IMG/VR virus record: IMGVR_UViG_3300021440_000013
Span: 1 to 64,000 of that record
Length of the DNA stretch: 64,000 nucleotides
Strand: one strand, 5' to 3'
The notes beneath the pieces are model-generated. The model was not told the origin of the DNA. It did not search any database and worked only from the letters and a program-made list of their open reading frames with translations. Made by a program: the position numbers and the translations under genes. Below are positions 1 to 19,424 of the stretch, in pieces. Each line of letters starts with the position of its first letter. The first letter of the stretch is position 1.

Positions 1-20
1 TTTTTTTTTTTGCATAGGAA

Positions 21-2269: not shown

Positions 2270-4126
2270 ATGGCCACCAACTTCATCAACCCGAATGCCA
2301 ACCAAACCGCCGAAGGTGCTGAAAAGCAACCCGCTCAGCGCACCTGGTCTTTCCACAGCTCCAACCTCCTAGGTTCGCCCGTGGCAGCCGGCGTGGGTGG
2401 TGAGTATCTCCAGAAGTTCCGCCAGACGCTGGCTGAGATCTATAAAGAGATCGTCCCTGGCGTTGAAGTTCAGATGCTGACCCTGAACCGGCAGAACACC
2501 CCGGCACTGCGTTTCTCCGCGATCATCATCGCGTGCCGTATCCCCGAAGTCAGTGTGAACCACGTCGCGTTTCATACGCTGATTCTGGAGGCTACCGGTG
2601 AGCGCCTCCAGCCGGTGATGCGTAACATCGATAACCAGCAAGTCCGGGTAAACCTGGTGACGCCCGACGCGTTCGACGAGGTCCTGCGTAAGATCGCCTA
2701 CGACGCAGTCTCTGAAACGTACCCTGGCGCACCGGTGGTTGTGGCTGAAGGTATGGTGGTTCCGGCTTCCATCGTCCCGAGCAACAAAGATACGATCGAG
2801 AACATCGCCCGTAACGCCGCGATGGCGTGCTTCTCGGAGCTCTCGGTACAGACCAACAACTTTGGTCAACTGAACCTGGCTTACATGGAAAAAGATGTTC
2901 GATTCACCATCGACGTCTCTTTCGGTAACCATCAGGTGACCGATTTCACCGGTATGCCCCAGCGTGCTTCGGTGCTGATTGGCTTTAACAGCCAAAAGAA
3001 GATCGCGGGTCAACAAGGCTGGGGTGTCGAAACGATCAACATCCCGGATTCGGTGTCGCGTATTTGCGAACTGGGCGGTTTCCTTAACCCGATCTGGGCA
3101 CCGGTGGCTCAACAGAACGCCTATGGCCTGGGTTACGGTAACTACATGCAGCCGCAGCAAATCCAACCCACGCAAAAGTTCGCGGCGGAGTTCGTGATTA
3201 CCAGCGTGCGCAGCGACCATGCAACGAGCCCGGCTGCCGTTCTGCTGGCGCTCTCGTCATTCCTCTCCATCGTTGACAACGACACTTGGATCCAAGGTTT
3301 CTTGCCGCGTGGTGGCCAGCGTGATCGCAACCAGATCGATATCACGGATATCGGTGCCCTCAACATCACGGCCAATTTGGCTAACGAAAAGGACCAAGGT
3401 GATTTCGGTACGCCGATCGACACGGCTCCGATGCGCAGTGACCTGCGTGAAGCCAACAAGTATCTGGTCTCGCTGTTCCAGCCGGGTGTAGTGGTGTCGA
3501 TGGACTGCCCGGAAGTGGGTCCGTCTTCGTGGTACATGACGCCCTTCGCGCTGGCTTCGATGGGGATCGGTGACAATGCTGACCGTATCTACAACGCCGC
3601 GATGGAGCTGACCAACGGTAACTTCGGTAAATACTTCGATCGTAAGACCCGGATGTTCAGCAACAGCCAACGTGTTCCGCTGGGTTATTACACCGTCGGT
3701 GATAAGCAGTTCGATATCCGCAGTATCGATTACGTGGCCATCTGCAATCAGTTCCGCAATAACCCGCAGATGATCCATGAGTACAGCAACACCTTCGTGC
3801 CGCGTCAAGGTGTCTCCCCGGCGCGTAACCTCGCGATCCGTGAAGGCATCATTATGCAGGCTCTCAACGAGCAGGCAGTCATCACCGGCTATGCTTCTCG
3901 TGTGACCTTCAGTCGTGAATTTGTTGAAGCGCTCTCGATGGCCATGTCAGATTGCAAGCTTCCCGTGACCGTCAACACCCCGCTCAATGCAGACCAACTG
4001 CGCTCGGGCGTGGCTGCGCCTGACTTCATCAGTGGTTCTCTGGCCCGTGGCACCCATACCTTCAACAGCGGTTATGGTGGTCAGCGTGTTCAGACCAACT
4101 ACACGGGCAATGCGTTCCGTCGTTAA
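2270..4126 (+). CDS. chmA: Chimallin (phage nuclear shell protein)
   Basis: 618 aa; segments align by eye with recalled 201phi2-1 gp105 (VITSVR..WIQGFLP..DIGAL; LGYY..D.R.ID; TGYASRVTFSREFVEAL); SD GGAG, strong codon bias, downstream terminator. Confidence 0.9.
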   Translation: MATNFINPNANQTAEGAEKQPAQRTWSFHSSNLLGSPVAAGVGGEYLQKFRQTLAEIYKEIVPGVEVQMLTLNRQNTPALRFSAIIIACRIPEVSVNHVAFHTLILEATGERLQPVMRNIDNQQVRVNLVTPDAFDEVLRKIAYDAVSETYPGAPVVVAEGMVVPASIVPSNKDTIENIARNAAMACFSELSVQTNNFGQLNLAYMEKDVRFTIDVSFGNHQVTDFTGMPQRASVLIGFNSQKKIAGQQGWGVETINIPDSVSRICELGGFLNPIWAPVAQQNAYGLGYGNYMQPQQIQPTQKFAAEFVITSVRSDHATSPAAVLLALSSFLSIVDNDTWIQGFLPRGGQRDRNQIDITDIGALNITANLANEKDQGDFGTPIDTAPMRSDLREANKYLVSLFQPGVVVSMDCPEVGPSSWYMTPFALASMGIGDNADRIYNAAMELTNGNFGKYFDRKTRMFSNSQRVPLGYYTVGDKQFDIRSIDYVAICNQFRNNPQMIHEYSNTFVPRQGVSPARNLAIREGIIMQALNEQAVITGYASRVTFSREFVEALSMAMSDCKLPVTVNTPLNADQLRSGVAAPDFISGSLARGTHTFNSGYGGQRVQTNYTGNAFRR

Positions 4127-4148
4127 TCGCAAGCGGTAAGCCTTAAAC

Positions 4149-4190
4149 TAGGTGGAGGGGTCAAACCCTCCACCTATTCTTTTTTCTTTT
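4149..4190 (+). terminator. Intrinsic terminator after chmA
   Basis: TAGGTGGAGGG-GTCAAA-CCCTCCACCTA followed by a T tract. Confidence 0.85.
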
Positions 4191-5004
4191 GAAGGTATTT
4201 AAAGTGGATATAAAGGAACTTGAAAAGCTCGTCAAAAGGATCACAAAGCCCGCCTGGATCCAAGAGACATTTAAAACCACCGACCAAGACGGTAAACTCA
4301 CCGTTTATTTAAAAAGCCCAGAACATATCCCTAAAAGCACCACAGTTAAGAATCTGTTTTCCTCATTCAGGAAAACAGAAGATCCTTTTCCGAGGATCGC
4401 GTGCTTTTGTATCACCGCCATGGTTGAGGAAAAAAAGCAAACGGTCTTTATTAGCTACTTTAGAGTCGCGCTAGGGACAGGTACCGCGACCTATCAGTTG
4501 CGTTCAATCTGGGTAGCGGAACCCAATCACCGCTTTATTAATTTGACGCACTTTAAAGACGGTGATGTGATCATCACTGTGGCAACATTGTCGAGTCAGT
4601 CGCCGCTCGGTTACATTCAGGCTAAGCTTGATCAGGAGGGCGCCTACACGGATTCCTTATACACCCCTGAGTCCATGGTCAGCTCTGAAAAAGAATCGCT
4701 CCTAGAGGCTGCTAAACCACTTAGTTTCGGTGAATCTTTACTCGCCCTAGAAGAGTACACCCTGGAAGAGCTTGAAATCCTAGAAGCCCGCATCCAATGT
4801 CTTCGGAAAAAGAAAGAAGTGCAGAATTTGGCCAACGAGCTCCTGAATGCACTTAACAAAATCGACAACGAACCACTTAAGTACATCGCCAAGATGATCC
4901 CTGAGGGGTTGAAGATGGTCGACATCGGTGAAGCACCTTCTGTAATCGATACACAACTTAACGCTATTCGGCGGCTTATTGCCACTTTCAAAGAGCTATT
5001 TTAA
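4189..5004 (+). CDS. Hypothetical protein
   Basis: 271-aa ORF with TTG start, C-terminal coiled-coil-like segment. Confidence 0.55.
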   Translation: MKVFKVDIKELEKLVKRITKPAWIQETFKTTDQDGKLTVYLKSPEHIPKSTTVKNLFSSFRKTEDPFPRIACFCITAMVEEKKQTVFISYFRVALGTGTATYQLRSIWVAEPNHRFINLTHFKDGDVIITVATLSSQSPLGYIQAKLDQEGAYTDSLYTPESMVSSEKESLLEAAKPLSFGESLLALEEYTLEELEILEARIQCLRKKKEVQNLANELLNALNKIDNEPLKYIAKMIPEGLKMVDIGEAPSVIDTQLNAIRRLIATFKELF

Positions 5005-5060: not shown

Positions 5061-6590
5061 TTAGAACAGACTGTCAGAGCCGCCTTGATAACCACTGCCT
5101 CCACGCGGAATTTTACGAAGCGGGCGATAGTTCTCTATATGGAGGTTACTCGGGATCGGCATCTTAGAGGGCGGGAAGGGCAAGAAGAAAGAGCGCGCTG
5201 ATCCTTCAACCGGTGTCGGGAAGCGGTGCTTATCGAGTACGACATGAAGGTAATCACCATTCTCTGTCTCGACCTTGTGGATGAGTAGGCCGATGTCGTA
5301 GATCCGATCAAGACCTTTGGTCTTCTCGAAGTAGCCACCCCCTTTAATGGTATTGAGGAATTGCTCATGCGGCACCCCTTGCAAGAGCCGTTTAGCATCG
5401 GTCGAGAGTTGATGCGGAGTGATGAAAAGAATGTTATTGGCTGCTGAGAACGCCCGGATGCGTGAAAGCATATCCATGACATCGTCACCCATGCTACCCT
5501 GGTTGCAGCCCGTAGTCGGAAGCTTCGAGAGATAATCCACCTCCAAGACTTCGATTGAATAACCCATCGATTCAAGCTCAACCACGCGGTTGATCAATGA
5601 TTGATAGGTCCAACTGGTGGGATTCACCTCATCCATCAGGATGTGGTAGCCATTGACCTGTAGGCACTGCTTAACATAGGAGATCATTTCGTCGACCGTT
5701 ACTTTCTTAACGTCGACGAAAATACCCGTTTCCTGGTATTTAAAGAGCTGATACAAAAACTGTGCGTTATTACGGAGCGGATCTTCGAAGGTCACCCGGT
5801 AGAGCAGCGGCTTTTTCTTCGGATCTTTGGTTTTGGGTTTGTTGAAAAGTGCGATGTGGGCAAACAGGGACAAAGCGAAGCCGGTCTTGTAGTTGTGTTG
5901 AAGTGCGCCAATGACCACGGTGTCACCTGGACGAGGACCCCCCTGAAGCGCTTGGTTGAGTTCTTTCCAACCCGTCGTAAACGCCAAGCCTTCTGAGTTC
6001 GACGCTGCCACCGTGTTGAAGATTTCTCGCATGGAGGTGTCGTCACCGATATCGAGACTGCTGGTGATAGCGGGGTCTTTGGCTACGGCTTTACTTGAAG
6101 TCACTTCGAGCTCCAGGATAATGTTACGAATGTACTCACCCATGTCAGAAATGGTGTGGCGTTTAAAGTTGATGTCGGCGTGTGCCCGCGCAACGATCTC
6201 GGCTAAGCGCAGCTCTCTAAAGTAGTTGAGAAGCGTTTTTCGAAGCGTGGTGATGGTGCGTTTAAGGGTGGGTGGATTCAGTTCACCTTCGAGACCTTGA
6301 GAGATCGCTGTGTAGAGATTGAGATCTCCGTTAGTGATAATCCGAATCTGTTGAAGCAGCTCGAGTAGATCGTACTCGTGACCGATTCGGTTATTACCCA
6401 TCTCGAGCGCAAGCTTACGAAGCTCAAGCGATGTGTCACGACGGGTCGGGATACCGATCACTTTGTCGTTGATCTTGACTTTCTCAAGAATAGTTTTCAC
6501 GAGACCGGAGCTATTCTCGGTCGCGTTTTCAAGTTGCGACTCACGGAACAAAAGCGTGATGCATTTAGAGAGTAGGAGATTGACTTCCAT
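5061..6590 (-). CDS. dnaB: DnaB-like replicative helicase (phiKZ gp118-like)
   Basis: TTGWKELNQAL..GDTVVIGALQHNYKTGF variant Walker A, VDYL Walker B, HQLS, KHR arginine finger. Confidence 0.88.
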   Translation of the reverse strand: MEVNLLLSKCITLLFRESQLENATENSSGLVKTILEKVKINDKVIGIPTRRDTSLELRKLALEMGNNRIGHEYDLLELLQQIRIITNGDLNLYTAISQGLEGELNPPTLKRTITTLRKTLLNYFRELRLAEIVARAHADINFKRHTISDMGEYIRNIILELEVTSSKAVAKDPAITSSLDIGDDTSMREIFNTVAASNSEGLAFTTGWKELNQALQGGPRPGDTVVIGALQHNYKTGFALSLFAHIALFNKPKTKDPKKKPLLYRVTFEDPLRNNAQFLYQLFKYQETGIFVDVKKVTVDEMISYVKQCLQVNGYHILMDEVNPTSWTYQSLINRVVELESMGYSIEVLEVDYLSKLPTTGCNQGSMGDDVMDMLSRIRAFSAANNILFITPHQLSTDAKRLLQGVPHEQFLNTIKGGGYFEKTKGLDRIYDIGLLIHKVETENGDYLHVVLDKHRFPTPVEGSARSFFLPFPPSKMPIPSNLHIENYRPLRKIPRGGSGYQGGSDSLF

Positions 6591-7435: not shown

Positions 7436-9607
7436 ATGAGTATCAAATCCAACTCCCTTCGGGGCGGCCAAGTTCATTCGAGCTCCCAAGATGCTCGTTT
7501 CCTGGGTGAACTGAACGCCGCACTGCTTGACAGCGCTCCGGTTCCGGGCAACATCAGCCGTCGCCTCTTCGCTACCGAAGCGATCAGCGAAACCGACATG
7601 ATCCAGATCGACAGCGCCGCTTCGAACCTGGAAGCCACCCTGCGCTCTGTTTCTGGCAAGCTCAACCTGAATATCGCCGGCAATTCCATCTGGGTGGCCG
7701 AACAAGCTGCTGTTCAAGGTGGTCTTCTGGCCAGCGATCCGGCCGCTTTTGCTGGCCGTTCTTCCGACTTCCCGCAGCACAGCACCGCTGACAAGTTCGT
7801 GATCGGTGCTTCCGGTGATCCCGGCTATGTGGGCAAGCGCTCCACCGTCTTCGCAACCGAAGCGTTTGACAACCGTGAAACGCGTAACGCCGTACTGTAC
7901 ACGATGGCGTACAACTACTCGGTGGCGCGTCAAGATGAATTCGGCGAAACCGTGTGGCCGACCCTGACTCTGCCGGCTGACCAAGTGGGTTTTGGCATCG
8001 TCGTGAACCGTCTGACCATCCATCGTGGTGTGACCCATACCGTGGACGGTAAGATCGTTGACTTCAACAAGAAGGATCTGATGCGCGCTGAAGCGGATCA
8101 CACCATCCTGCTGAAAGACAAAACCCGCATCTACCCGGTGGTGCGTCCGGCAGCGATCAATAAGTTCGTTGATGCGGCCCTGATCGCCCCTTACGCCTAC
8201 GACAACGAAGGCGTTGTGATCAACACCGCTCCGTACCGTGTAGGTGAAGAAATCGGCATCGTCGGTATCTCCCAGACCGACGCTCAGCTTGATGCTGGCT
8301 CGGCCAACCAGACCGACACCGTGGATCCGGCCATCTCGCTGGAAAACCTCTACGTCAAGATCGGTAATGATATCATCACCTTCCCGGTCTACAGCCAGCC
8401 GACGGCAAACTTCACCTACGCACCCCAGGGTCTGGACAAGCTGCGTGTGCTGAACTTCCGCAGCAAGGCCGTCTCGATCTCCAACAAGACCAAGCAGTTC
8501 AACGGCGCCGCACTGGTGGCTCTGGCTGACGTTGTGACCAACAACTACACCGTTGTGGTTGAACTGGTTGCTACCGGCGAAGCCAACACCGAGTTCGGTT
8601 CGGTCGTGGTCTATGGTAACAAGGTTGCCATCGTCAAGGTGCAGGATGCTGACGGCAAGCTCATCGCTGACAGCAACCCCGTGGTCCAAGATGTGCGTGC
8701 CGCTTTCTCTGGCGCTCAGATCATCGGCTATGACCTGCGTGCTTACAAGACCAACATCAACATGCGTGAGCGTGGTGATTTCATCGATCGCACCCACTTC
8801 ACCCAGCTGTATGAAGTGCCCCTGCTCTCCCCGATCACGGCTCAGCGTCCGCAGAACACCGACGGCCAACTGGACGCTGGAGACTTCGAAGCCCTGGTTA
8901 CCGCCACCCGTTTCCGTCTGAAGAACGATGCCGTTACCGCAATCTTCGAATGCTCCAAGCGTCTGCAAGAGCATATCGAAGGGGGTTCGGCAGGTGAAGA
9001 AATTCCGGCAGCCATCGGTGCCGCACGTTACCATGTTCGCCCGACCTTCTACGCACCGGCGCCGTACGACGTCACCGCCATCGTTCAGAGCCTGAACAGC
9101 TCCGATCTGGCCTCCGATCTTCAGTCCGCTATCGTGAACATCGTGCGTGACCTGGCTTTCCGCATGTACGTACATTCGGAATATCAGGCTGCTGCTTCCG
9201 CACTGGGTCAAGTCGGTAACCCGACGGTGACGATCGCAACCGATCCGATCCTGCATCGTTACCTGATGATCAATGGCGATCTGCGCACCCTGACCGAAAA
9301 GTTCAGTGTTCGCATCGTCTCGACCCTGGACCGCCGTTTCACCGGCAAGATGTTCATCACCTTCGGTGTGTTCGACGAGAACCGTAACCAAGCGCCGAAC
9401 CTGCTCAACTGGGGCAACCTGGTGTATGCGCCGGAAGTCGTGATGACCGCCTCGGTGCCACGTGGTGAATCGCTGTCGCGCGAAACCATCGTGCAGCCGC
9501 GCTACAAGTTCGTCAACCATCTGCCGATCGCCGCCATGCTCTCGTTCGTGAACGTGCCGGATCTGTTCGCTGACGGTCAAGCGTTCATCACCACCGTTAA
9601 GCCGTAA
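7436..9607 (+). CDS. Major capsid protein (phiKZ gp120-like)
   Basis: 723 aa; ATE maturation sites (FATEAF), ARQDEFGET, N.RERG, LNWGN..PE and VQPRY motifs; SD GAGG; extreme codon bias. Confidence 0.9.
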   Translation: MSIKSNSLRGGQVHSSSQDARFLGELNAALLDSAPVPGNISRRLFATEAISETDMIQIDSAASNLEATLRSVSGKLNLNIAGNSIWVAEQAAVQGGLLASDPAAFAGRSSDFPQHSTADKFVIGASGDPGYVGKRSTVFATEAFDNRETRNAVLYTMAYNYSVARQDEFGETVWPTLTLPADQVGFGIVVNRLTIHRGVTHTVDGKIVDFNKKDLMRAEADHTILLKDKTRIYPVVRPAAINKFVDAALIAPYAYDNEGVVINTAPYRVGEEIGIVGISQTDAQLDAGSANQTDTVDPAISLENLYVKIGNDIITFPVYSQPTANFTYAPQGLDKLRVLNFRSKAVSISNKTKQFNGAALVALADVVTNNYTVVVELVATGEANTEFGSVVVYGNKVAIVKVQDADGKLIADSNPVVQDVRAAFSGAQIIGYDLRAYKTNINMRERGDFIDRTHFTQLYEVPLLSPITAQRPQNTDGQLDAGDFEALVTATRFRLKNDAVTAIFECSKRLQEHIEGGSAGEEIPAAIGAARYHVRPTFYAPAPYDVTAIVQSLNSSDLASDLQSAIVNIVRDLAFRMYVHSEYQAAASALGQVGNPTVTIATDPILHRYLMINGDLRTLTEKFSVRIVSTLDRRFTGKMFITFGVFDENRNQAPNLLNWGNLVYAPEVVMTASVPRGESLSRETIVQPRYKFVNHLPIAAMLSFVNVPDLFADGQAFITTVKP

Positions 9608-11403: not shown

Positions 11404-11434
11404 TGACGAGGAGGGCACTAAGCCCTCCTCGTCA
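11404..11434. terminator. Bidirectional terminator hairpin
   Basis: TGACGAGGAGGGC-ACTAA-GCCCTCCTCGTCA between convergent genes. Confidence 0.8.
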
Positions 11435-11435
11435 G

Positions 11436-11912
11436 TCACGACCCTTTTAAAGAGTCTTTTAACACCTGCTCAGCATTTTCTACCGCCTTCACTTTTCTCT
11501 CATGGACCGTGTCAGTTATTTCACGAAGCATCTTTGTCATATAACACGGCAGATTCAAGAATTCCGTCAGGTTCAACCCCCAGATCTCCTTGTAATTCTT
11601 CTCAGCGTAGTTAATCAAAGAATCATACAGCATTCCACCCTCAGTAAAGTTCTCCGAAGGATGCATCGCTACGCTCGCTAGCGGTCTAGCATCAGAAGGC
11701 TCACGTGGACTCAGGTGGTCGTATATCCCATAGCGTGTTTCATATTGATCGTACATGACGATCTTACTATCCACGCGGTTAAGGGCAGGTAGATTTTCAA
11801 GGGCATGCTCAATCAGATCTCTCGGATCTCGATCTAACCCAAAGGTCAGATCGAGAATAGAGCGCTTTACCGATTGTCGGCTCGTCCAAGACGCTGAGCG
11901 ACTAGGGCGAAA
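11436..11912 (-). CDS. Probable -1 frameshift extension (gpGT/E'-like tail chaperone C-terminal part)
   Basis: Frame is open from ~11960 to the stop at 11436; annotated GTG 11774 has no SD; IWGLNLTEFLNLP motif. Confidence 0.65.
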   Translation of the reverse strand, partial: FRPSRSASWTSRQSVKRSILDLTFGLDRDPRDLIEHALENLPALNRVDSKIVMYDQYETRYGIYDHLSPREPSDARPLASVAMHPSENFTEGGMLYDSLINYAEKNYKEIWGLNLTEFLNLPCYMTKMLREITDTVHERKVKAVENAEQVLKDSLKGS

Positions 11913-13495
11913 AAAACCTGAAGGATATCGATAGGAATAATCGAAGCGTGCCTCGGGTACTCATCCGAGGGCGCTTGAGGTTTTCCACACACCGGGCAAT
12001 CAAAGGACGGCACACCGATAACAGCGAGTGTCGATTCATTAATGTACTTGATCGTCTCATCCGTAAAGGCTTCACGAATAGAGTCGGTCGCTGAGAGAAC
12101 GCTTAGGACGTTCTCAATGGTTTCTCGGTCAGTGATGAGTTTGATTGAAGCCTCATCACCGCCTTCTTCGTTAAACTGACCGTATTCAATTGAATCCACC
12201 CAGTGAATGTATTGCCGAAGACTGGTGGCTTTACTGACACGGTTGATTTCGTTGTTACGATCTTCAACCGAGGCGTTCATTTCAAGCGCAGCGCTGATAC
12301 TCTCAACGATGCCTCCGATCCAGCGGTGGCCTTGTTCGATGTACTCGGTTATCGTTGGCGTTTTGAGTGTAAACGCCAACTCATGTTTAGTGCCCTTATT
12401 GACCGTGATGCGTCTTTTCTGTGAAAGCTTGAGCTCGTCTTTGTAACGCTTGATCGAATCAAGACTTTTTGAATTGGCAGACATACCCGTCATGTGGGTC
12501 TTTTGCCAATCGGTCAGTGCGGATTCATCGACCCATTGAAGCTTGGTGATGTTGAGGGTTTCTTCAACCACATGGGTGCACTTAGTCGGGTCAACTACGC
12601 AGCCGGTCGAGTAATGAAAACCGCTTGGGTAGTTGGCAGAGAGAAAACCCCAGATAAAGCTGTAGATGTCCTGCGGCGCTACCCAGTTTTTAAGTTCAGA
12701 GAGCGGAAGCTCCTCAGAGCGCACGCTGGTGTTATACACATGGCGCAAGGCGAACTCGAAAACCCGATCGAGCGTGTAAACGATGTTGTTAGATAACGCC
12801 AAGCCGTAGCTGTAGCGACCCATCTTGATCTTGTCTGATGCGATTGCGCGGTTGAGCTCCAGAAGCTCAACCTCCGTAGCGGGCTTAAAGGTTACCCAGA
12901 TACCACTGTTCCAAAGCGGGGTTCTAAAGAGACCCCCCACACCAAGGTGAGAGACGATCTGCAAAAGTGCAGCTTCGCCTTCGATCTCTCTGGTACCCGC
13001 TTCTTTTTTAAAGCTGGGTGCGATACCCCGAAGCTTAGTGCCGTTGTGTTCAACCTGCTGTTTAAAGCTGGCGCCAACCTGCGTAAGACGTGAATTATAG
13101 AAGTTGCCTTCGGGCAAAAAACGCAGGCTCTCATGCATCACGTAAAGCCACTTGCGCTGATTCTTACTGACGACATTATCGACGTTAGGCTGGTTGTTAA
13201 GCCTCGCTTCGATTTCATCCGCCGCTGCCGGAGGAATCATCACCATGTCGGGCGTGCCTTTTTCACGCGCCGAGCTCGTCGGGTAGTCCTGTAGCGCATT
13301 TTCAACGCGATTAAAGCTCTGTAAAGGAACTTCGGGTTTTGTTTCCTGAGACGAGGTTTCTTCAGTGGAAACCTCGTTAGCAGAAACCGGCTCCTTAACC
13401 TCAGGCTCCGCGCCCTTGGCTTCCAGATCACTTACGATCGGCTCACCCGCCTCAACTTCAGGCTCAGTGGACGCACCGTTATTTTCATTACTCAT
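11867..13495 (-). CDS. Conserved phiKZ-like protein (gp77-like position); probable tail/baseplate assembly chaperone (gpG-like)
   Basis: 542 aa, acidic N-terminus, CPVCG near the C-terminus, LQVFF encoded by a slippery T run. Confidence 0.6.
   Translation of the reverse strand: MSNENNGASTEPEVEAGEPIVSDLEAKGAEPEVKEPVSANEVSTEETSSQETKPEVPLQSFNRVENALQDYPTSSAREKGTPDMVMIPPAAADEIEARLNNQPNVDNVVSKNQRKWLYVMHESLRFLPEGNFYNSRLTQVGASFKQQVEHNGTKLRGIAPSFKKEAGTREIEGEAALLQIVSHLGVGGLFRTPLWNSGIWVTFKPATEVELLELNRAIASDKIKMGRYSYGLALSNNIVYTLDRVFEFALRHVYNTSVRSEELPLSELKNWVAPQDIYSFIWGFLSANYPSGFHYSTGCVVDPTKCTHVVEETLNITKLQWVDESALTDWQKTHMTGMSANSKSLDSIKRYKDELKLSQKRRITVNKGTKHELAFTLKTPTITEYIEQGHRWIGGIVESISAALEMNASVEDRNNEINRVSKATSLRQYIHWVDSIEYGQFNEEGGDEASIKLITDRETIENVLSVLSATDSIREAFTDETIKYINESTLAVIGVPSFDCPVCGKPQAPSDEYPRHASIIPIDILQVFFALVAQRLGRADNR
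11909..11915 (-). promoter_or_regulatory. -1 programmed frameshift slippery heptamer T TTT TTC
   Basis: Minus strand CAG GTT TTT TTC GCC; the -1 frame continues into the 11436 ORF; hairpin 6 nt downstream. Confidence 0.7.
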
Positions 13496-14030
13496 CTTGC
13501 TTTTCCTTCACATCGATAACTTCAGCGTTTTCTTTATCAAGTTTTGCTTGAGCGCGATCCTTAGCTTCAAGCGCAAACTCAGTAAAGGTGATCAGGGTGT
13601 GCTGCATGGTTCCGTTTAGGTGTGCGCTAAACTGTTGATAGTTTTCAAAAAGATTAATGCACAGTGATAGCTCATCATTACTCCTGACGATCCCGTGTTT
13701 GGTGTTGTGTTGATTACGGATCTTGATAAAATCATCCGTAAACTTATTAAGATCACGATTAACGGCTTCAACCGCGATGTTAAACTCACGCACATGCGTG
13801 CAGCCATAGTGACGCACAAGCTGCGCGGTTTCATGTACTTCAGAAGCAATCGTGCTAATCTGATTAGCGATCGCTTCTGAGATTTCGTTGAGCTCTTCCC
13901 ACGTTTGCTGGGCGACTTTACTCACATCGCCTTGCGTGATTAAGGATTTTGCATGAACACTTGGATACGCCGCCGCTACCAACGTAGCGCCCACGCTGGG
14001 CATAATCATCTTAAGCGTGTTTTTTTTCAT
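13488..14030 (-). CDS. Hypothetical helical protein
   Basis: 180-aa ORF overlapping the start of the next gene. Confidence 0.65.
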   Translation of the reverse strand: MKKNTLKMIMPSVGATLVAAAYPSVHAKSLITQGDVSKVAQQTWEELNEISEAIANQISTIASEVHETAQLVRHYGCTHVREFNIAVEAVNRDLNKFTDDFIKIRNQHNTKHGIVRSNDELSLCINLFENYQQFSAHLNGTMQHTLITFTEFALEAKDRAQAKLDKENAEVIDVKEKQDE

Positions 14031-15104: not shown

Positions 15105-16415
15105 ATGAAACTGATCGACTATCTTCTCTTTGCGATTCAAGAGAAGTGTTATAAAAAGAAAGCCTGGGTGATAAGCGTCTTTTCAATTACCCAAGAGAGC
15201 GATGAACAAAAGAAAAACACCTATCCCGGCAAGCTAATACGTGAGCCGTTTGGTTTCTTTACCGTCACCAAAGAGAATGAGAAAGTTCAGATCGAGACGA
15301 AGAATCCTTTGACCGAACCGCTTTTGACGATCAAAGAGCGTCTGACAATCACCAAGGCCTGGATCGGTTCGTTACGGGAAGACAGTTTAGAGACGAGTAT
15401 TGGCACCCTCTTGGTCAACCTCATCTGCCTTTACGAAGCATTTGGGGATAAGTTCCCGTATAAGGCGGGAACTTTTAGCCCTAAGGATCTTGAAAAAGAG
15501 ATCGTTAAAAAACTCCAAGACACGCCTAAGCCTGGCGCGGCTCGTGAAGAAGGGGTGTATTATGTCGACGAATATCTAAAGTTCTGTGAAGGTATTCTTT
15601 TTCTAGAGAGCTTTACACAGATCTTTACGCACTCCATCACTCGCCAAGGTCTTCTTCCGGCGCCTGGGCGTAAAGCTTTTCGTGAGGAGTTGGTTAAGAA
15701 GTATGGCGACACCCTGCGCGACCCGGTCACGATGGCTAAGTTTGAAGCTGAACTATCGGCTTTTGATAAAGCGTACTTAAAGAGCGATCCTGCCTATGGT
15801 AAATTCATGTCTGGCAAGGTGGCTAAGAGCCGCATGAAGGCCTACATGACCCAGGGCGGTGAATCGAATAGCTTTATCCAGGCCATGGAGGTTACGCCCA
15901 TCGTCCAGCCACTGGAGGAGGGTTTCCCGATCGATAAAGAAGGCTTCACGGCCGTATCTAACACGATCCGTTATGGTTCTTTTTCACGAGGCTCAGAGAC
16001 CGTGAACGGCGGCGTCACCGCTAAAGCACTGATGCGTGCCGCAGACAACTGGAAGATCACCGAAGGCGACTGTGGAACAACCCTGGGTATCCGGCGTCTT
16101 TATCGAGAAAATGAAATCGAACACCTCGTCGGGCGCTATGTTATTCAAAACGGAAAGAGCGTTGTCATCGAGACGATGGATCAGGCACGCGCCTTTATCA
16201 ACCAGAAAATTGTTCTGAGAAGCCCACAATACTGTAGGAGAAGTGGCACACAAACCTGTGAGGTCTGTGCCGGGCTTGCACTTGCTAAGTACCCCACTGG
16301 CCTGCCGATCCCTCTTATGGAGGTCTCCGGCGGCATCCTAACCGACAGTCTTAAGTTGATGCACAACACAACGCTCGTAACCGAAGTCGTGCATCTGCCC
16401 AGTGTAATCACCTAA
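15105..16415 (+). CDS. rpoC: Virion RNA polymerase beta-prime C-terminal-part subunit (phiKZ gp80-like)
   Basis: ITEGDCGT..LRSPQYC..TCEVCAG beta-prime Zn-binding motif; LKLMH trigger-loop-like end. Confidence 0.85.
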   Translation: MKLIDYLLFAIQEKCYKKKAWVISVFSITQESDEQKKNTYPGKLIREPFGFFTVTKENEKVQIETKNPLTEPLLTIKERLTITKAWIGSLREDSLETSIGTLLVNLICLYEAFGDKFPYKAGTFSPKDLEKEIVKKLQDTPKPGAAREEGVYYVDEYLKFCEGILFLESFTQIFTHSITRQGLLPAPGRKAFREELVKKYGDTLRDPVTMAKFEAELSAFDKAYLKSDPAYGKFMSGKVAKSRMKAYMTQGGESNSFIQAMEVTPIVQPLEEGFPIDKEGFTAVSNTIRYGSFSRGSETVNGGVTAKALMRAADNWKITEGDCGTTLGIRRLYRENEIEHLVGRYVIQNGKSVVIETMDQARAFINQKIVLRSPQYCRRSGTQTCEVCAGLALAKYPTGLPIPLMEVSGGILTDSLKLMHNTTLVTEVVHLPSVIT

Positions 16416-18059: not shown

Positions 18060-18260
18060 GTGGAATGAATCTACTCGGCTAACACTCACTAGCTGAAACA
18101 CTGTGTTAGTTTTCTTACTAGAACGCTAGCACAGGAGCATGAGTATTTTTTCATACGTAAGAAAACAATGCTGCACGTGTCAGCGGCACGTGCAGCAACC
18201 TCCCTAGGGTCTACATCATTAGGGAGTGTAAACTTTTTTACCCTTTACGAAAAGAAGTTT
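18060..18260 (+). ncRNA. Candidate structured RNA upstream of tnpB (omega-RNA-like or regulatory leader)
   Basis: Stems CTAACAC/GTGTTAG, GTTTTCTTAC/GTAAGAAAAC, TGCTGCACGTG/CACGTGCAGCA, CTCCCTA/TAGGGAG. Confidence 0.45.
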
Positions 18261-18263
18261 GGT

Positions 18264-19424
18264 ATGGCTAAACCATCTAATCGTATTATCAGAGGTTTTA
18301 AGTATTGTATCCATCCCTCGGAGGAACAAAAGGTAGAGTTAAATTCTATTTTAGAAGACTGCCGACGCATTAGAAACAAAGTCAGCAAAGTCATGCATAC
18401 GTTAATTCCCAGAAATCAAAACTGGGAAGACGTCTTTAAGCTAGAAGATGCACTTAAAGTTGCCCAAGGAATTAAAACCCAGTTCTTTAAAACAACAAGA
18501 GCACCCGCACGTTCACTCACAACAGCCATCGAAATACTTTACCAGCTTCATAAGAAAGCGATTAAGTTGCGTGTTAAGCCGCCAGGCTACAAACACGAAG
18601 AAAGTCACTTGGCGGTTCACTACCCACACGAACTCTATAAGCTCTGTGGCGATCATCTTACACTCTCAGGTATAACGGGCGATATTCGTATAAACCTAAG
18701 CAGACCTATGCCAGATGGTAAAGTTCATAGAGTCGTGGTGAGTCGCGATATCTCTGGAAGGTACTTCATTTCGTTTACGATCTGTTTTGTTAAACAGATC
18801 GAACATGGTGATAAGACCATCGGTCTAGATCTCGGTGTCGATGACCTTGTCACGACGTCTGAAGGGGTTCGCTTCGAAGCTAAACTCAAGGCAACGGATG
18901 TTCAGCTTAAGTTGAACTGGTATTTCGATCTTCTTAGACGCAAGACAGTGATGTCTAGGTCTTGGAAAGCGCTAAAAGAAAAGATCCGCAAATACAAAAC
19001 ATGGGTGATGAATACTCGGATCGAACAGTTCTATGAGATCGCCACTGCTGTTGTAAAATCAGCATCAGCGATTTCGATGGAAAGGCTTAACATCACCAAA
19101 CTTTTGACTCAGCCGCGTCGGGCTTTTCAGATTTCACACTCTGGCTGGAATGATTTGAAACGAATATTGGTTGCTAAAGCCGAAGAAGCACAGATCGTGA
19201 TTGGATTTGTAGGGCAGTATTACCCAAGCACTAAGACGTGTTCACGTTGTGGCTATGTTTTGCCAAAATCACTTCCTCTCACAATTCGTTCATGGCAGTG
19301 TCTTGAGTGCTCTTCAATCCATGATCGCGATGTTAACGCCGCGATAAATATTCGAGACTGTCTTTCGAGCTGGATAAAACGAGGCGTGTATAAAACCCAA
19401 CATAAAGTTGTTCTCTTAAACTAA
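18264..19424 (+). CDS. tnpB: TnpB-family (IS200/IS605) RNA-guided RuvC endonuclease
   Basis: N-terminal FKYCIHPSEEQ HTH, GLDLG (RuvC-I D), SMERLNI (RuvC-II E), STKTCSRCG..WQCLEC Zn ribbon, DRDVNAAINI (RuvC-III D); ATG 18264 likelier than 18168. Confidence 0.92.
   Translation: MAKPSNRIIRGFKYCIHPSEEQKVELNSILEDCRRIRNKVSKVMHTLIPRNQNWEDVFKLEDALKVAQGIKTQFFKTTRAPARSLTTAIEILYQLHKKAIKLRVKPPGYKHEESHLAVHYPHELYKLCGDHLTLSGITGDIRINLSRPMPDGKVHRVVVSRDISGRYFISFTICFVKQIEHGDKTIGLDLGVDDLVTTSEGVRFEAKLKATDVQLKLNWYFDLLRRKTVMSRSWKALKEKIRKYKTWVMNTRIEQFYEIATAVVKSASAISMERLNITKLLTQPRRAFQISHSGWNDLKRILVAKAEEAQIVIGFVGQYYPSTKTCSRCGYVLPKSLPLTIRSWQCLECSSIHDRDVNAAINIRDCLSSWIKRGVYKTQHKVVLLN

What the first reader, a model, noticed from the sequence alone, without database searches (positions are those of the whole stretch)
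11436..13495. Programmed -1 frameshift producing a gpG/gpGT-type tail-chaperone pair in a jumbo phage
Seen: near its end the 542-aa gene reads CAG GTT TTT TTC GCC (heptamer T TTT TTC, 11915-11909). The -1 frame is open from ~11960 into the downstream 112-aa ORF, whose GTG lacks an SD. A plausible stimulatory hairpin (GTCG.CT..CGTC-TTG-GACG.AG.CGAC) starts 6 nt after the site. The extension contains IWGLNLTEFLNLP, resembling the W/G..s.E...LP motif of P2 gpE' and related GT extensions. Known: long-tailed phages make G/GT chaperones by -1 frameshifting. Inference: two conserved phiKZ-like hypotheticals are one recoded, unusually large chaperone of ~685 aa (LQVFF-RPSRSASW...), with no tape-measure gene next to it in this window.
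Basis: partly seen in the sequence, partly recalled or inferred. Interest (0 to 1): 0.85.

Follow-up and report, generated by a model that had tools for sequence, protein, structure and literature searches.

The report
Conserved -1 frameshift in jumbo phages
A core gene of the nucleus-forming jumbo phages (phiKZ gp77 family) ends with a run of U's at which the reading frame almost certainly slips back one base, adding about 157 extra amino acids; this is conserved in every relative examined but is not annotated in any of the ten public genome records whose annotation I inspected.

Summary
The 542-aa gene (11867-13495, minus strand) contains T_TTT_TTC at 11915-11909, and the -1 frame is open from there to the stop of the downstream ORF (11436).

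One T7 run is not unusual in this window (18 found, 20.5 expected). The comparison with relatives is decisive:
- In all 63 related loci with a complete 3' end, plus phiKZ, Asesino and Bacillus phage AgentSmith, the downstream ORF lies in the -1 frame and overlaps the same Phe-Phe site.
- The site is kept U-rich against codon usage (P about 1e-10 to 1e-12).
- 28 of 52 distinct loci have no ATG/GTG/TTG anywhere before the extension's only invariant residue.

Programmed -1 recoding giving about 529+157 = 686 aa is therefore strongly supported.

Two parts of the finding are not supported. The proposed hairpin is no better than shuffled sequence, and the claimed resemblance to P2 E' is not significant.

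The protein is not a member of the lambda G/GT or P2 E/E+E' families. It has a different size, a different genomic position, and no profile or fold match. Predicted-structure matches and two weak Pfam hits point instead to T4 gp26/gp51 baseplate-hub assembly chaperones. That link is unproven.

Verdict: a real, apparently undescribed recoding event in chimallivirus core gene cg18; function inferred only.

The parts
11867..13495 (-). Zero-frame gene, 542 aa (short product). Homologue of phiKZ gp077, PhiPA3 gp074, RAY gp267 and chimallivirus core gene cg18. Residues 1-80 are predicted disordered; the rest is a confident alpha/beta fold.
   Evidence: ORF list; phrog_4585 E 8.8e-109; tblastn hits in 228 phage records; PhiPA3 annotation notes; cg18 table; AF2 pLDDT 80.9, pTM 0.80.
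11909..11915 (-). Slippery heptamer T_TTT_TTC (U_UUU_UUC) on the conserved Phe528-Phe529 codons, in the X_XXY_YYZ phase.
   Evidence: Sequence. The same position in 51 distinct homologous tails reads T_TTT_TTT 20, T_TTT_TTC 14, T_TTT_TTG 1, A_TTT_TTT 6, G_TTT_TTT 5, G_TTT_TTC 4, C_GTT_TTT 1. Codon-usage tests give P = 5e-10 and 2e-12.
11436..11909 (-). -1 frame extension: 157 codons (RPSRSASW...KGS) plus the TGA stop. Joined to residues 1-529 it gives the long product of about 686 aa. Predicted mostly helical, with a long C-terminal helix.
   Evidence: Translation; phrog_12109 E 3.5e-25 with the match starting at residue 18, 28 codons upstream of the GTG; alignments; AF2 pLDDT 78.
11867..11908 (-). 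Dual-coded overlap: the last 13 sense codons plus stop of the short form, read in the -1 frame as the first residues of the extension.
   Evidence: Direct reading. The overlap is 8-21 codons in relatives.
11436..11774 (-). The '112-aa ORF' as an ORF finder sees it (first canonical start is GTG). It is only the 3' two-thirds of the extension and is not an independent gene.
   Evidence: The family's invariant Phe (residue 23 of the extension) lies upstream of this GTG.
11987..11998 (-). CxxC (Cys500, Cys503). Together with Cys299 and Cys306 (12578-12601) these are the four conserved cysteines, a probable zinc site of the body.
   Evidence: The four Cys are nearly invariant or invariant in alignments A4 and A7. 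There are weak YgiT-type zinc-finger hits. Zinc binding is inferred.
13488..14030 (-). Upstream co-oriented 180-aa gene, positional equivalent of phiKZ gp078. It overlaps the start of the big gene by 8 nt and is a probable operon partner.
   Evidence: synteny gp078-gp077-gp076.4 in phiKZ, PhiPA3, Noxifer, RAY, Asesino and AgentSmith. Homology itself was not tested.
11404..11434 (.). Perfect 13-bp inverted repeat with a 5-nt loop, immediately after the extension's stop and between convergent genes. Probable end of the transcription unit.
   Evidence: No T tail, so it was not called by the terminator scan. Function is inferred.

Best explanation
This is a programmed -1 ribosomal frameshift near the 3' end of a conserved chimallivirus gene (phiKZ gp77 family, cg18).

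Most ribosomes read CAG GTT TTT TTC GCC... in frame and stop 13 codons later, giving the 542-aa short form. A fraction slip back one base while tRNA-Phe occupies UUU (P site) and UUC (A site); both can re-pair with UUU in the -1 frame. Those ribosomes continue with CGC CCU AGU... for 157 more codons, giving a long form of about 686 aa that shares residues 1-529.

The phage would thereby make two versions of one protein in a ratio set by slip efficiency: a body alone, and a body carrying a helical C-terminal module. The downstream 'gene' has no initiation signal of its own and is expressed only this way.

Shown: the anatomy, its conservation, nucleotide-level selection on the slip site, and the absence of start codons.

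Inferred:
- that the shift is ribosomal rather than made by RNA polymerase;
- its efficiency, probably modest since no stimulator is conserved;
- the function. My best guess is a non-virion assembly factor for the T4-like baseplate hub or tail, with the extension binding a second partner, in the logic of lambda G/GT.
For: 1. Frame and overlap. In all 63 loci with a complete 3' end, the -1 frame is open from at least 43 nt before the big gene's stop to 410-512 nt after it, while the +1 frame closes quickly. The same holds in phiKZ itself, Asesino and Bacillus phage AgentSmith. If frames drifted freely among 28 lineages sharing under 50% identity, the chance would be about (1/3)^27 = 1e-13.

2. 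Slip site. The first Phe codon is TTT in 27 of 28 representatives against 11.3 expected from each gene's own codon usage (P = 2e-12). The wobble base of the preceding codon is T in 22 of 28 against 8.3 expected (P = 5e-10), whatever the amino acid (V/L/I/T/A/S). This holds even at 62% GC, where CTT is 2% of Leu codons and TTT 6% of Phe codons.

3. No independent start. The only invariant residue of the extension (Phe, 52 of 52) lies 20-43 codons after the slip. In 28 of 52 distinct loci (18 of 27 representatives) there is no ATG/GTG/TTG from the upstream -1-frame stop to that Phe, and only 3 loci have a start codon with an SD-like motif. In phiKZ the first start is 85 codons in. In L012 and L015 it is 100-101 codons in.

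4. Homology to phrog_12109 begins 28 codons upstream of the window's GTG.

5. No in-frame fusion appears among the best 150 of 1759 clusters at 50% identity, as expected if both forms are needed.

6. Motif competence. H_HH.U_UU.Y heptamers are among the most efficient in E. coli, and the U_UU.C and U_UU.U tetramers rank second and third (PMC4066793). P2 E/E+E' uses T_TTT_TTG.

7. Negative control. T4 gp26 has no extension and encodes its terminal Phe-Phe as TTC TTT.
Against: - There is no direct product evidence: no junction peptide, no reporter assay.
- No conserved downstream structure. I saw no SD-like element upstream in the 20-nt flanks printed; this was by eye, not a test. No Rfam frameshift element matches. 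Efficiency may therefore be low.
- 16 of 51 distinct sites are not perfect X_XXY_YYZ heptamers (A_TTT_TTT, G_TTT_TTT, G_TTT_TTC, C_GTT_TTT). They retain only the one-tRNA U_UUY tetramer.
- One clade (Psa21-like) has a conserved ATG 18 codons after the slip, and several loci have TTG or GTG before the invariant Phe, so separate initiation may coexist there.
- A U-run is also what transcriptional slippage needs.
- The functional assignment rests on weak evidence: hhalign against a gp26/gp51 profile gives probability 1-1.5%, a local gp26 HMM gives no hit, and only 2 of 125 members touch PF12322.
Confidence: 0.72

Rival explanations
1. Transcriptional slippage. The RNA polymerase (the phage's own multisubunit enzyme or the host's) stutters on the T-run and adds one extra U to a fraction of mRNAs. 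Those mRNAs then encode the same long form of about 686 aa without any ribosomal event.
For: The conserved element is a homopolymer run of 7-8 in 35 of 51 distinct sites. The selected wobble T lengthens the run. No ribosomal stimulator is conserved. UUUUUUU is under-represented in E. coli genes in all three frames, which Sharma et al. suggest may be due to transcriptional slippage or a high rate of indel mutation (PMC4066793).
Against: Runs are only 5-6 T in 16 of 51 distinct sites (G_TTT_TTC, G/A_TTT_TTT, C_GTT_TTT), which from my own knowledge is short for polymerase slippage. In 18 of 51 the second Phe codon is TTC, which shortens the run but keeps a proper ribosomal heptamer or tetramer. 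The run never extends into the following codon, which always starts with A or G. The arrangement persists across hosts, Gram-negative and Bacillus.
Confidence: 0.15
2. Two separate genes. The small protein is initiated on its own, at a non-canonical codon (ATT, CTG and similar) or by coupling or re-initiation after the big gene's stop. The common -1 phase would be a relic of a tight operon junction.
For: Public records annotate two CDSs. Some clades do have ATG or TTG candidates 17-21 codons after the slip (Psa21-like ATG; a TTG shared by Noxifer, PhiPA3 and 201phi2-1-like loci).
Against: 28 of 52 loci have no canonical start before the invariant Phe, and only 3 have an SD-like motif. This model gives no reason to hold T_TTT_TTY against codon bias. 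The distance from the big gene's stop to the conserved part varies, and no stop-start overlap motif is conserved. Annotated starts are inconsistent between records, truncating the conserved region or overlapping the big gene by 136 nt.
Confidence: 0.08
3. Artefact or decay. A one-base homopolymer sequencing error, or a recent frameshift mutation, split one 686-aa gene in this metagenome-assembled contig.
For: The window comes from a metagenomic viral contig (L004 = IMGVR_UViG_3300021440_000013), and the break is at a T7 run, the classic place for indel errors.
Against: The same break in the same frame is found in every one of more than 60 independently sequenced genomes, including isolates phiKZ, PhiPA3, 201phi2-1, RAY, Noxifer, Asesino and AgentSmith. 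No unbroken version exists among the best 150 representative proteins.
Confidence: 0.01

Closest known systems
Lambda gpG/gpGT and P2 gpE/gpE+E' tail assembly chaperones (conserved -1 frameshift of long-tailed phages)
   Same: A -1 slip near the 3' end of a phage gene yields a short form and a C-terminally extended form sharing the N-terminal body. The slip site is U-rich, and P2 uses T_TTT_TTG. No strong stimulator is evident here. The gene is not marked as a virion protein in the phiKZ record, whereas its neighbours gp79-gp97 are.
   Different: The body is 529 aa, against about 140 aa (G) and 91 aa (E). The gene is not placed between tube and tape-measure genes; it sits among RNA-polymerase, helicase and head genes. 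There is no sequence, profile or fold similarity. It has a four-cysteine motif.
T4 gp26 / gp51 baseplate hub assembly chaperones (Pfam PF12322 T4_baseplate)
   Same: The AF2 model of the big protein matches BFVD models annotated 'baseplate hub assembly protein, T4-like', 'baseplate hub subunit' and 'baseplate protein' (E 1e-4 to 1e-2, probability at least 0.99, TM 0.42-0.51 on the target). Two family members hit PF12322 (E 5.2e-5 and 1.1e-3). gp26 has four nearly invariant to invariant cysteines, and so does the big protein; gp26 also ends CPECGK...EFFELL. The AgentSmith homologue is annotated this way. The chimallivirus hub is T4-like (bioRxiv 10.64898/2026.04.21.720040).
   Different: The big protein is two to three times larger. 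Profile-profile comparison is not significant and aligns a different register. A gp26 HMM finds nothing. The window protein itself does not hit PF12322. T4 gp26 has no slippery site and no -1 extension. T4 instead makes a second product (gp26') annotated within the same frame.
Bacterial dnaX tau/gamma and IS3-family orfA/orfAB (-1 PRF setting a fixed ratio of two proteins)
   Same: An X_XXY_YYZ heptamer; two products with a common N-terminus from one mRNA. IS elements include U_UU.U_UU.C users (PMC4066793).
   Different: From my own knowledge, those cassettes have defined stimulators (an upstream SD-like element and a downstream hairpin or pseudoknot). None is conserved here. In dnaX the shift truncates rather than extends.

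Membership tests
Programmed -1 ribosomal frameshift cassette | Slippery heptamer X_XXY_YYZ in the zero-frame phase | tested here: met
   T_TTT_TTC at 11915-11909 in phase. 35 of 51 distinct homologous sites are T_TTT_TTN; all 51 keep at least the U_UUN tetramer.
Programmed -1 ribosomal frameshift cassette | Overlapping -1 ORF, open from the site, encoding a conserved polypeptide with no start of its own | tested here: met
   63 of 63 loci, plus phiKZ, Asesino and AgentSmith. No start codon before the invariant Phe in 28 of 52 distinct loci.
Programmed -1 ribosomal frameshift cassette | Nucleotide-level (synonymous-site) conservation of the slip site across diverged homologues | tested here: met
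   Observed 22 and 27 of 28 against expected 8.3 and 11.3; P = 5e-10 and 2e-12.
Programmed -1 ribosomal frameshift cassette | Stimulatory element (downstream hairpin or pseudoknot, or upstream SD-like sequence) | tested here: not met
   Window z = +0.92. Mean z = -0.42 over 52 sites, with 4 below -2. No Rfam element. This feature is not obligatory for phage G/GT-type sites.
Programmed -1 ribosomal frameshift cassette | Trans-frame protein actually made | not testable with these tools
   Needs mass spectrometry, western blot or a reporter. Literature searches found no report.
Lambda G/GT and P2 E/E+E' tail assembly chaperones | Sequence or profile membership in a TAC family (Pfam TAC, Phage_tail_T or GpE families) | tested here: not met
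   No Pfam hit for either piece, nor for 38 extension homologues. hhalign probability is at most 0.5% against lambda G, lambda T, P2 E and P2 E'.
Lambda G/GT and P2 E/E+E' tail assembly chaperones | Gene position between the major tail/tube gene and the tape-measure gene | tested here: not met
   Neighbours are the major head protein, a 558-aa unknown, a gp78-like gene, a gp79-like gene and the virion RNAP beta subunit. The same non-tail context is seen in phiKZ, PhiPA3 and Noxifer.
Lambda G/GT and P2 E/E+E' tail assembly chaperones | Small short form (about 90-150 aa) with an extension of similar size | tested here: not met
   Short form 542 aa, extension 157 aa; compare G at 140 aa, T at 144 aa and E at 91 aa.
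Lambda G/GT and P2 E/E+E' tail assembly chaperones | -1 frameshift near the 3' end producing a C-terminal extension; both forms required | tested here: met
   Anatomy met. No in-frame fusion in the top 150 representatives. The requirement for both forms is inferred, not shown.
Lambda G/GT and P2 E/E+E' tail assembly chaperones | Binds tape-measure protein (body) and tube protein (extension); absent from virions | not testable with these tools
   The only indirect evidence is that the phiKZ record marks gp79-gp97 as structural but not gp77, gp78 or gp76.4.
T4 gp26/gp51 hub assembly chaperones (PF12322) | Match to PF12322 above the gathering score | tested here: not met
   The window protein gives no hit at E up to 0.1. 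1 of 35 members hits at E 5.2e-5 and 1 of 90 at E 1.1e-3. T4 gp26 and gp51 score 216 and 178 bits.
T4 gp26/gp51 hub assembly chaperones (PF12322) | Shared fold | tested here: inconclusive
   Foldseek against BFVD gives E 1e-4 to 1e-2, probability at least 0.99 and TM 0.42-0.51 to proteins so annotated. Those are predicted models with automatic names, and the PDB search returned no significant match (best E 0.88). hhalign is not significant.

The most novel reading that the evidence does not exclude
The gp77/cg18 family is the long-missing counterpart of the G/GT tail assembly chaperone for phages with T4-type baseplate hubs. It would be a giant, zinc-binding relative of T4 gp26/gp51 whose conserved -1 frameshift sets the stoichiometry of a hub or tape-measure chaperone across about 1,700 protein clusters of jumbo phages. 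That would make the 'conserved frameshift in tail assembly genes' rule extend, through an unrelated protein, to a family where I found no such frameshift reported. It would also give a first function to a chimallivirus core gene.
Probability: 0.3. Interest if true: 0.85.

Novelty: new variant of a known kind. Interest (0 to 1): 0.72.

Why it matters
1. Annotation. In phiKZ, PhiPA3, RAY, Noxifer, Asesino, AgentSmith and the other records I inspected, the downstream ORF is truncated, given arbitrary starts, or left as an unannotated gap. In all of them the real product is most likely a fusion of about 680-850 aa that no proteomics database contains, so it could not have been detected.

2. Chimallivirus biology. 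cg18 is one of the 72 core genes and is listed as 'hypothetical protein'; 53 of the 72 have no known function. Knowing that it makes two nested products, and that it resembles hub assembly factors, gives a concrete, testable handle.

3. Recoding. This is a clean natural series of U_UUU_UUY sites without an obvious stimulator. It works across Gram-negative and Bacillus hosts and across 28-62% GC, which makes it useful for studying stimulator-independent slippage and for training frameshift predictors.

4. Tail assembly. If the chaperone analogy holds, it links the T4 gp26/gp51 puzzle to the G/GT paradigm.

Tried and rejected
- Near-identity DNA search in the phage collection: no match, so no close sequenced relative.
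- Downstream hairpin as stimulator: rejected.
- Rfam scan of the site: only a sub-threshold, irrelevant traJ_5 hit near the terminal inverted repeat.
- Sigma-70 promoter and intrinsic terminator scans: at background level.
- PDB sequence search with both family profiles: nothing.
- Foldseek against the PDB for both models: nothing below E 0.8. The villin-headpiece-like hits for the extension are not significant.
- hhalign of the extension against the T4 gp26/gp51 profile: negative.
- NCBIfam: only weak zinc-finger hits.
- The 686-687-aa structural neighbours (phiEaH2, 'Baseplate protein') looked like possible in-frame fusions. However, phrog_8054 and the Asesino locus show that the extra length is N-terminal and that the -1 ORF is still separate.
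- My own impression that the C-terminus of T4 gp26 (CPECGK...EFFELL) is collinear with CPVCGK...VFFAL was not upheld by hhalign, which chose another register. I keep it only as a lead.
- Literature searches (phiKZ + frameshift; gp77; Chimalliviridae core genome; jumbo phage + frameshift + chaperone; PHIKZ077 and variants; 201phi2-1 gp136) found no description of this recoding. The 'gp77' and 'gp136' hits referred to other phages' numbering.
They were rebuilt without those rows.
Full report
**What is in the window.** On the minus strand a 542-aa ORF (11867-13495) ends ...CAG GTT TTT TTC GCC CTA...TAA. The heptamer T_TTT_TTC lies at 11915-11909, in the X_XXY_YYZ phase. The -1 frame is open from 11960, through the TAA at 11869-11867, to a TGA at 11438-11436. 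An ORF finder reports only the last 112 codons of that frame, because the first ATG/GTG/TTG is a GTG at 11774. No purine-rich SD precedes it. A slip on Phe528-Phe529 would give 529 + 157 = 686 aa.

**Is it more than chance?** Within this one sequence, no. T7 runs occur 18 times in the window against 20.5 expected. The 59 nt after the site fold no better than shuffles: -11.9 kcal/mol, z = +0.92, and 168 of 200 shuffles fold at least as well. The case rests entirely on comparison with relatives.

**Identity and context.**
- The big protein belongs to phrog_4585, and the -1 piece to phrog_12109.
- The phrog_12109 match starts at residue 18 of the -1 piece, which is 28 codons upstream of the GTG.
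- tblastn finds the big protein in 228 phage records, all jumbo phages.
- Annotation notes identify it as phiKZ gp077 / PhiPA3 gp074 / 201phi2-1 gp136. It is core gene cg18 of Chimalliviridae, listed as 'hypothetical protein'.
- The window is a chimallivirus. It carries chimallin (2270-4126), a DnaB-like helicase, the major head protein (7436-9607), the virion RNA polymerase beta subunit (15105-16415) and a DNA polymerase.
- The contig is IMGVR_UViG_3300021440_000013, 216,876 bp.
- No tail tube or tape-measure gene is adjacent.

**Comparative test of the frameshift.** I fetched 61 loci from IMG/VR and annotated regions of pEa_SNUABM_54, Noxifer, PhiPA3, phiKZ, Asesino, AgentSmith, phiHQ and RAY.

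Frame and overlap:
- In all 63 loci with a complete 3' end, the -1 frame is open from at least 43 nt before the big gene's stop to 410-512 nt beyond it. The +1 frame closes quickly.
- The same holds in phiKZ, Asesino and Bacillus phage AgentSmith.

The slip site:
- The opening always spans one site, the conserved Phe-Phe.
- Among 51 distinct 3' ends the site reads T_TTT_TTT (20), T_TTT_TTC (14), T_TTT_TTG (1), A_TTT_TTT (6), G_TTT_TTT (5), G_TTT_TTC (4) and C_GTT_TTT (1).
- I took 28 representatives sharing under 50% identity, so synonymous sites are saturated.
- The first Phe codon is TTT in 27, against 11.3 expected from each gene's own usage (P = 2e-12).
- The wobble of the preceding codon is T in 22, against 8.3 expected (P = 5e-10). 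This holds whichever amino acid it encodes, and even at 62% GC, where CTT is 2% of Leu codons and TTT 6% of Phe codons.

The extension:
- It is 150-179 aa and conserved, with motifs GHV..FG, YGI.NH, PL..VA.HP.E and F.ELP.
- Its only invariant residue, a Phe present in 52 of 52, lies 20-43 codons after the slip.
- In 28 of 52 distinct loci (18 of 27 representatives) there is no ATG/GTG/TTG anywhere from the upstream -1-frame stop to that Phe. These include this window, pEa_SNUABM_54 and the phiKZ type.
- Only three loci have a start codon with an SD-like motif.
- In phiKZ the first start is 85 codons in. That is the annotated gp076.4, and 218 nt upstream of it are unannotated.
- In L012 and L015 the first start is 100-101 codons in.

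A profile search of 1.84 billion representative proteins found 1759 clusters. The best 150 all end at the end of the profile, so none is an in-frame fusion. This fits a need for both forms.

**Mechanism.**
- U_UUU_UUY lets both tRNA-Phe re-pair perfectly in the -1 frame.
- In E. coli, H_HH.U_UU.Y heptamers are among the most efficient. The tetramers U_UU.C and U_UU.U rank second and third after A_AA.G (PMC4066793).
- P2 E/E+E' slips on T_TTT_TTG.
- The imperfect variants (16 of 51) keep the one-tRNA tetramer.
- No downstream structure is conserved: mean z = -0.42 over 52 sites, with 4 below -2. No Rfam element matches. I therefore expect modest efficiency, as in G/GT. This is an inference.
- Transcriptional slippage on the same run would give the same protein and cannot be excluded from sequence. 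It is disfavoured by three things: the 5-6-nt runs in a third of lineages, the frequent TTC, and the fact that the run never extends into the next codon.
- Sequencing error is excluded by recurrence in more than 60 genomes.
- T4 gp26 has no extension and writes its terminal Phe-Phe as TTC TTT, a useful contrast.

**What the protein is.**
- AF2 with a 35-sequence alignment gives a confident model of the body: pLDDT 80.9, pTM 0.80, residues 1-80 disordered.
- The extension model is helical, with a long C-terminal helix (pLDDT 78).
- Neither model matches anything in the PDB.
- Against BFVD, after its jumbo-phage orthologues, the body matches models annotated 'Baseplate protein', 'Baseplate hub assembly protein, bacteriophage T4-like' and 'Putative baseplate hub subunit'. 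These have E 1e-4 to 1e-2, probability at least 0.99 and TM 0.42-0.51 on the target.
- Tail assembly chaperones appear in that list only at E above 1.
- T4 gp26 and gp51 both belong to Pfam PF12322 and are hub assembly chaperones (PMC3004832; NCBI name).
- One of 35 and one of 90 family members touch PF12322, at E 5.2e-5 and 1.1e-3.
- AgentSmith's homologue carries that annotation.
- gp26 has four nearly invariant to invariant cysteines, as does the big protein.
- Against the link: hhalign of the family against a gp26/gp51 profile is not significant (probability 1-1.5%). A gp26 HMM finds nothing. The window protein itself does not hit PF12322.
- I rate homology to gp26/gp51 at about even odds.
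- The phiKZ record flags gp79-gp97 as structural but not gp76.4, gp77 or gp78. That fits a non-virion assembly factor but proves nothing.

**Comparison with G/GT.**
- The logic is the same: a 3'-proximal -1 slip, nested products, a U-rich site and no strong stimulator.
- Membership fails every testable criterion: family profiles, gene position and size.
- The motif resemblance to P2 E' is 8 columns at E 0.12.
- So it works like G/GT in expression logic but is not a G/GT protein. Whether it chaperones tail or hub assembly is a hypothesis.

**Novelty.**
- None of the ten public records whose annotation I inspected annotates slippage here. Their downstream CDSs are truncated or arbitrarily started, or overlap by 136 nt.
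- Eight full-text searches found no report.
- The library lacks many subscription papers, so prior description cannot be excluded.
- I file it as a new variant of a known kind: canonical -1 recoding in a previously unrecognised, very large and widespread gene family.

**Verdict.**
- Recoding at the U-run, ribosomal or transcriptional: about 0.87.
- Ribosomal specifically: 0.72.
- G/GT family membership: rejected.
- Hub or tail assembly role: plausible, about 0.3-0.5.
- Interest: 0.72.

Noticed in passing
window 11404-11434: Perfect 13-bp inverted repeat (TGACGAGGAGGGC / GCCCTCCTCGTCA, 5-nt loop). It lies between the convergent 558-aa gene (ends 11401) and the extension ORF (stop 11436-11438). 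It has no T tail, so the terminator scan missed it. It may mark a bidirectional transcript end for the phage's own polymerases.
   Followed up: partly
window 18168-19424 (+): A 418-aa ORF matching transposase families (phrog_506, E 1.5e-59) sits inside the chimallivirus genome, between a DprA-like gene and the DNA polymerase. It may be a mobile element in a jumbo phage.
   Followed up: no
L066 (phiKZ NC_004629) 5686-5903; L072 (RAY) 2301-2436; L001 4035-4228; L069 3914-4128: Public annotations treat the extension inconsistently. phiKZ leaves a 218-nt gap before gp076.4. RAY gp266 is given a start 136 nt inside gp267. pEa_SNUABM_54 and AgentSmith annotate only the last 75-77 codons.
   Followed up: yes
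L067 (T4) 3803-4429 (-): T4 gp26 ends ...IKCPECGKTHAHVIRGLKEFFELL*, which by eye resembles the end of the big protein (...FDCPVCGKPQ...ILQVFFAL...). hhalign instead aligns gp26's C-terminus with the first cysteine pair (residues 299-321). T4 gp26 and gp51 are paralogues, both PF12322.
   Followed up: partly
L044, L047, L049, L052, L054, L063 (Psa21-like clade): This clade has the weaker site A_TTT_TTT together with a conserved ATG 18 codons after the slip. This suggests that some lineages may supplement or replace slippage with independent initiation.
   Followed up: partly
window 13488-13495 and 14020-14027: The gp78-like gene overlaps the start of the big gene by 8 nt, so translation may be coupled. 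It begins ATG AAA AAA AAT, an A8 run on the coding strand.
   Followed up: no
window 1-11: The window starts with a run of 11 T's. Window position 1 maps about 4.5 kb inside the parent contig (window 11870 corresponds to contig position about 16,369), so this is not a contig end.
   Followed up: no
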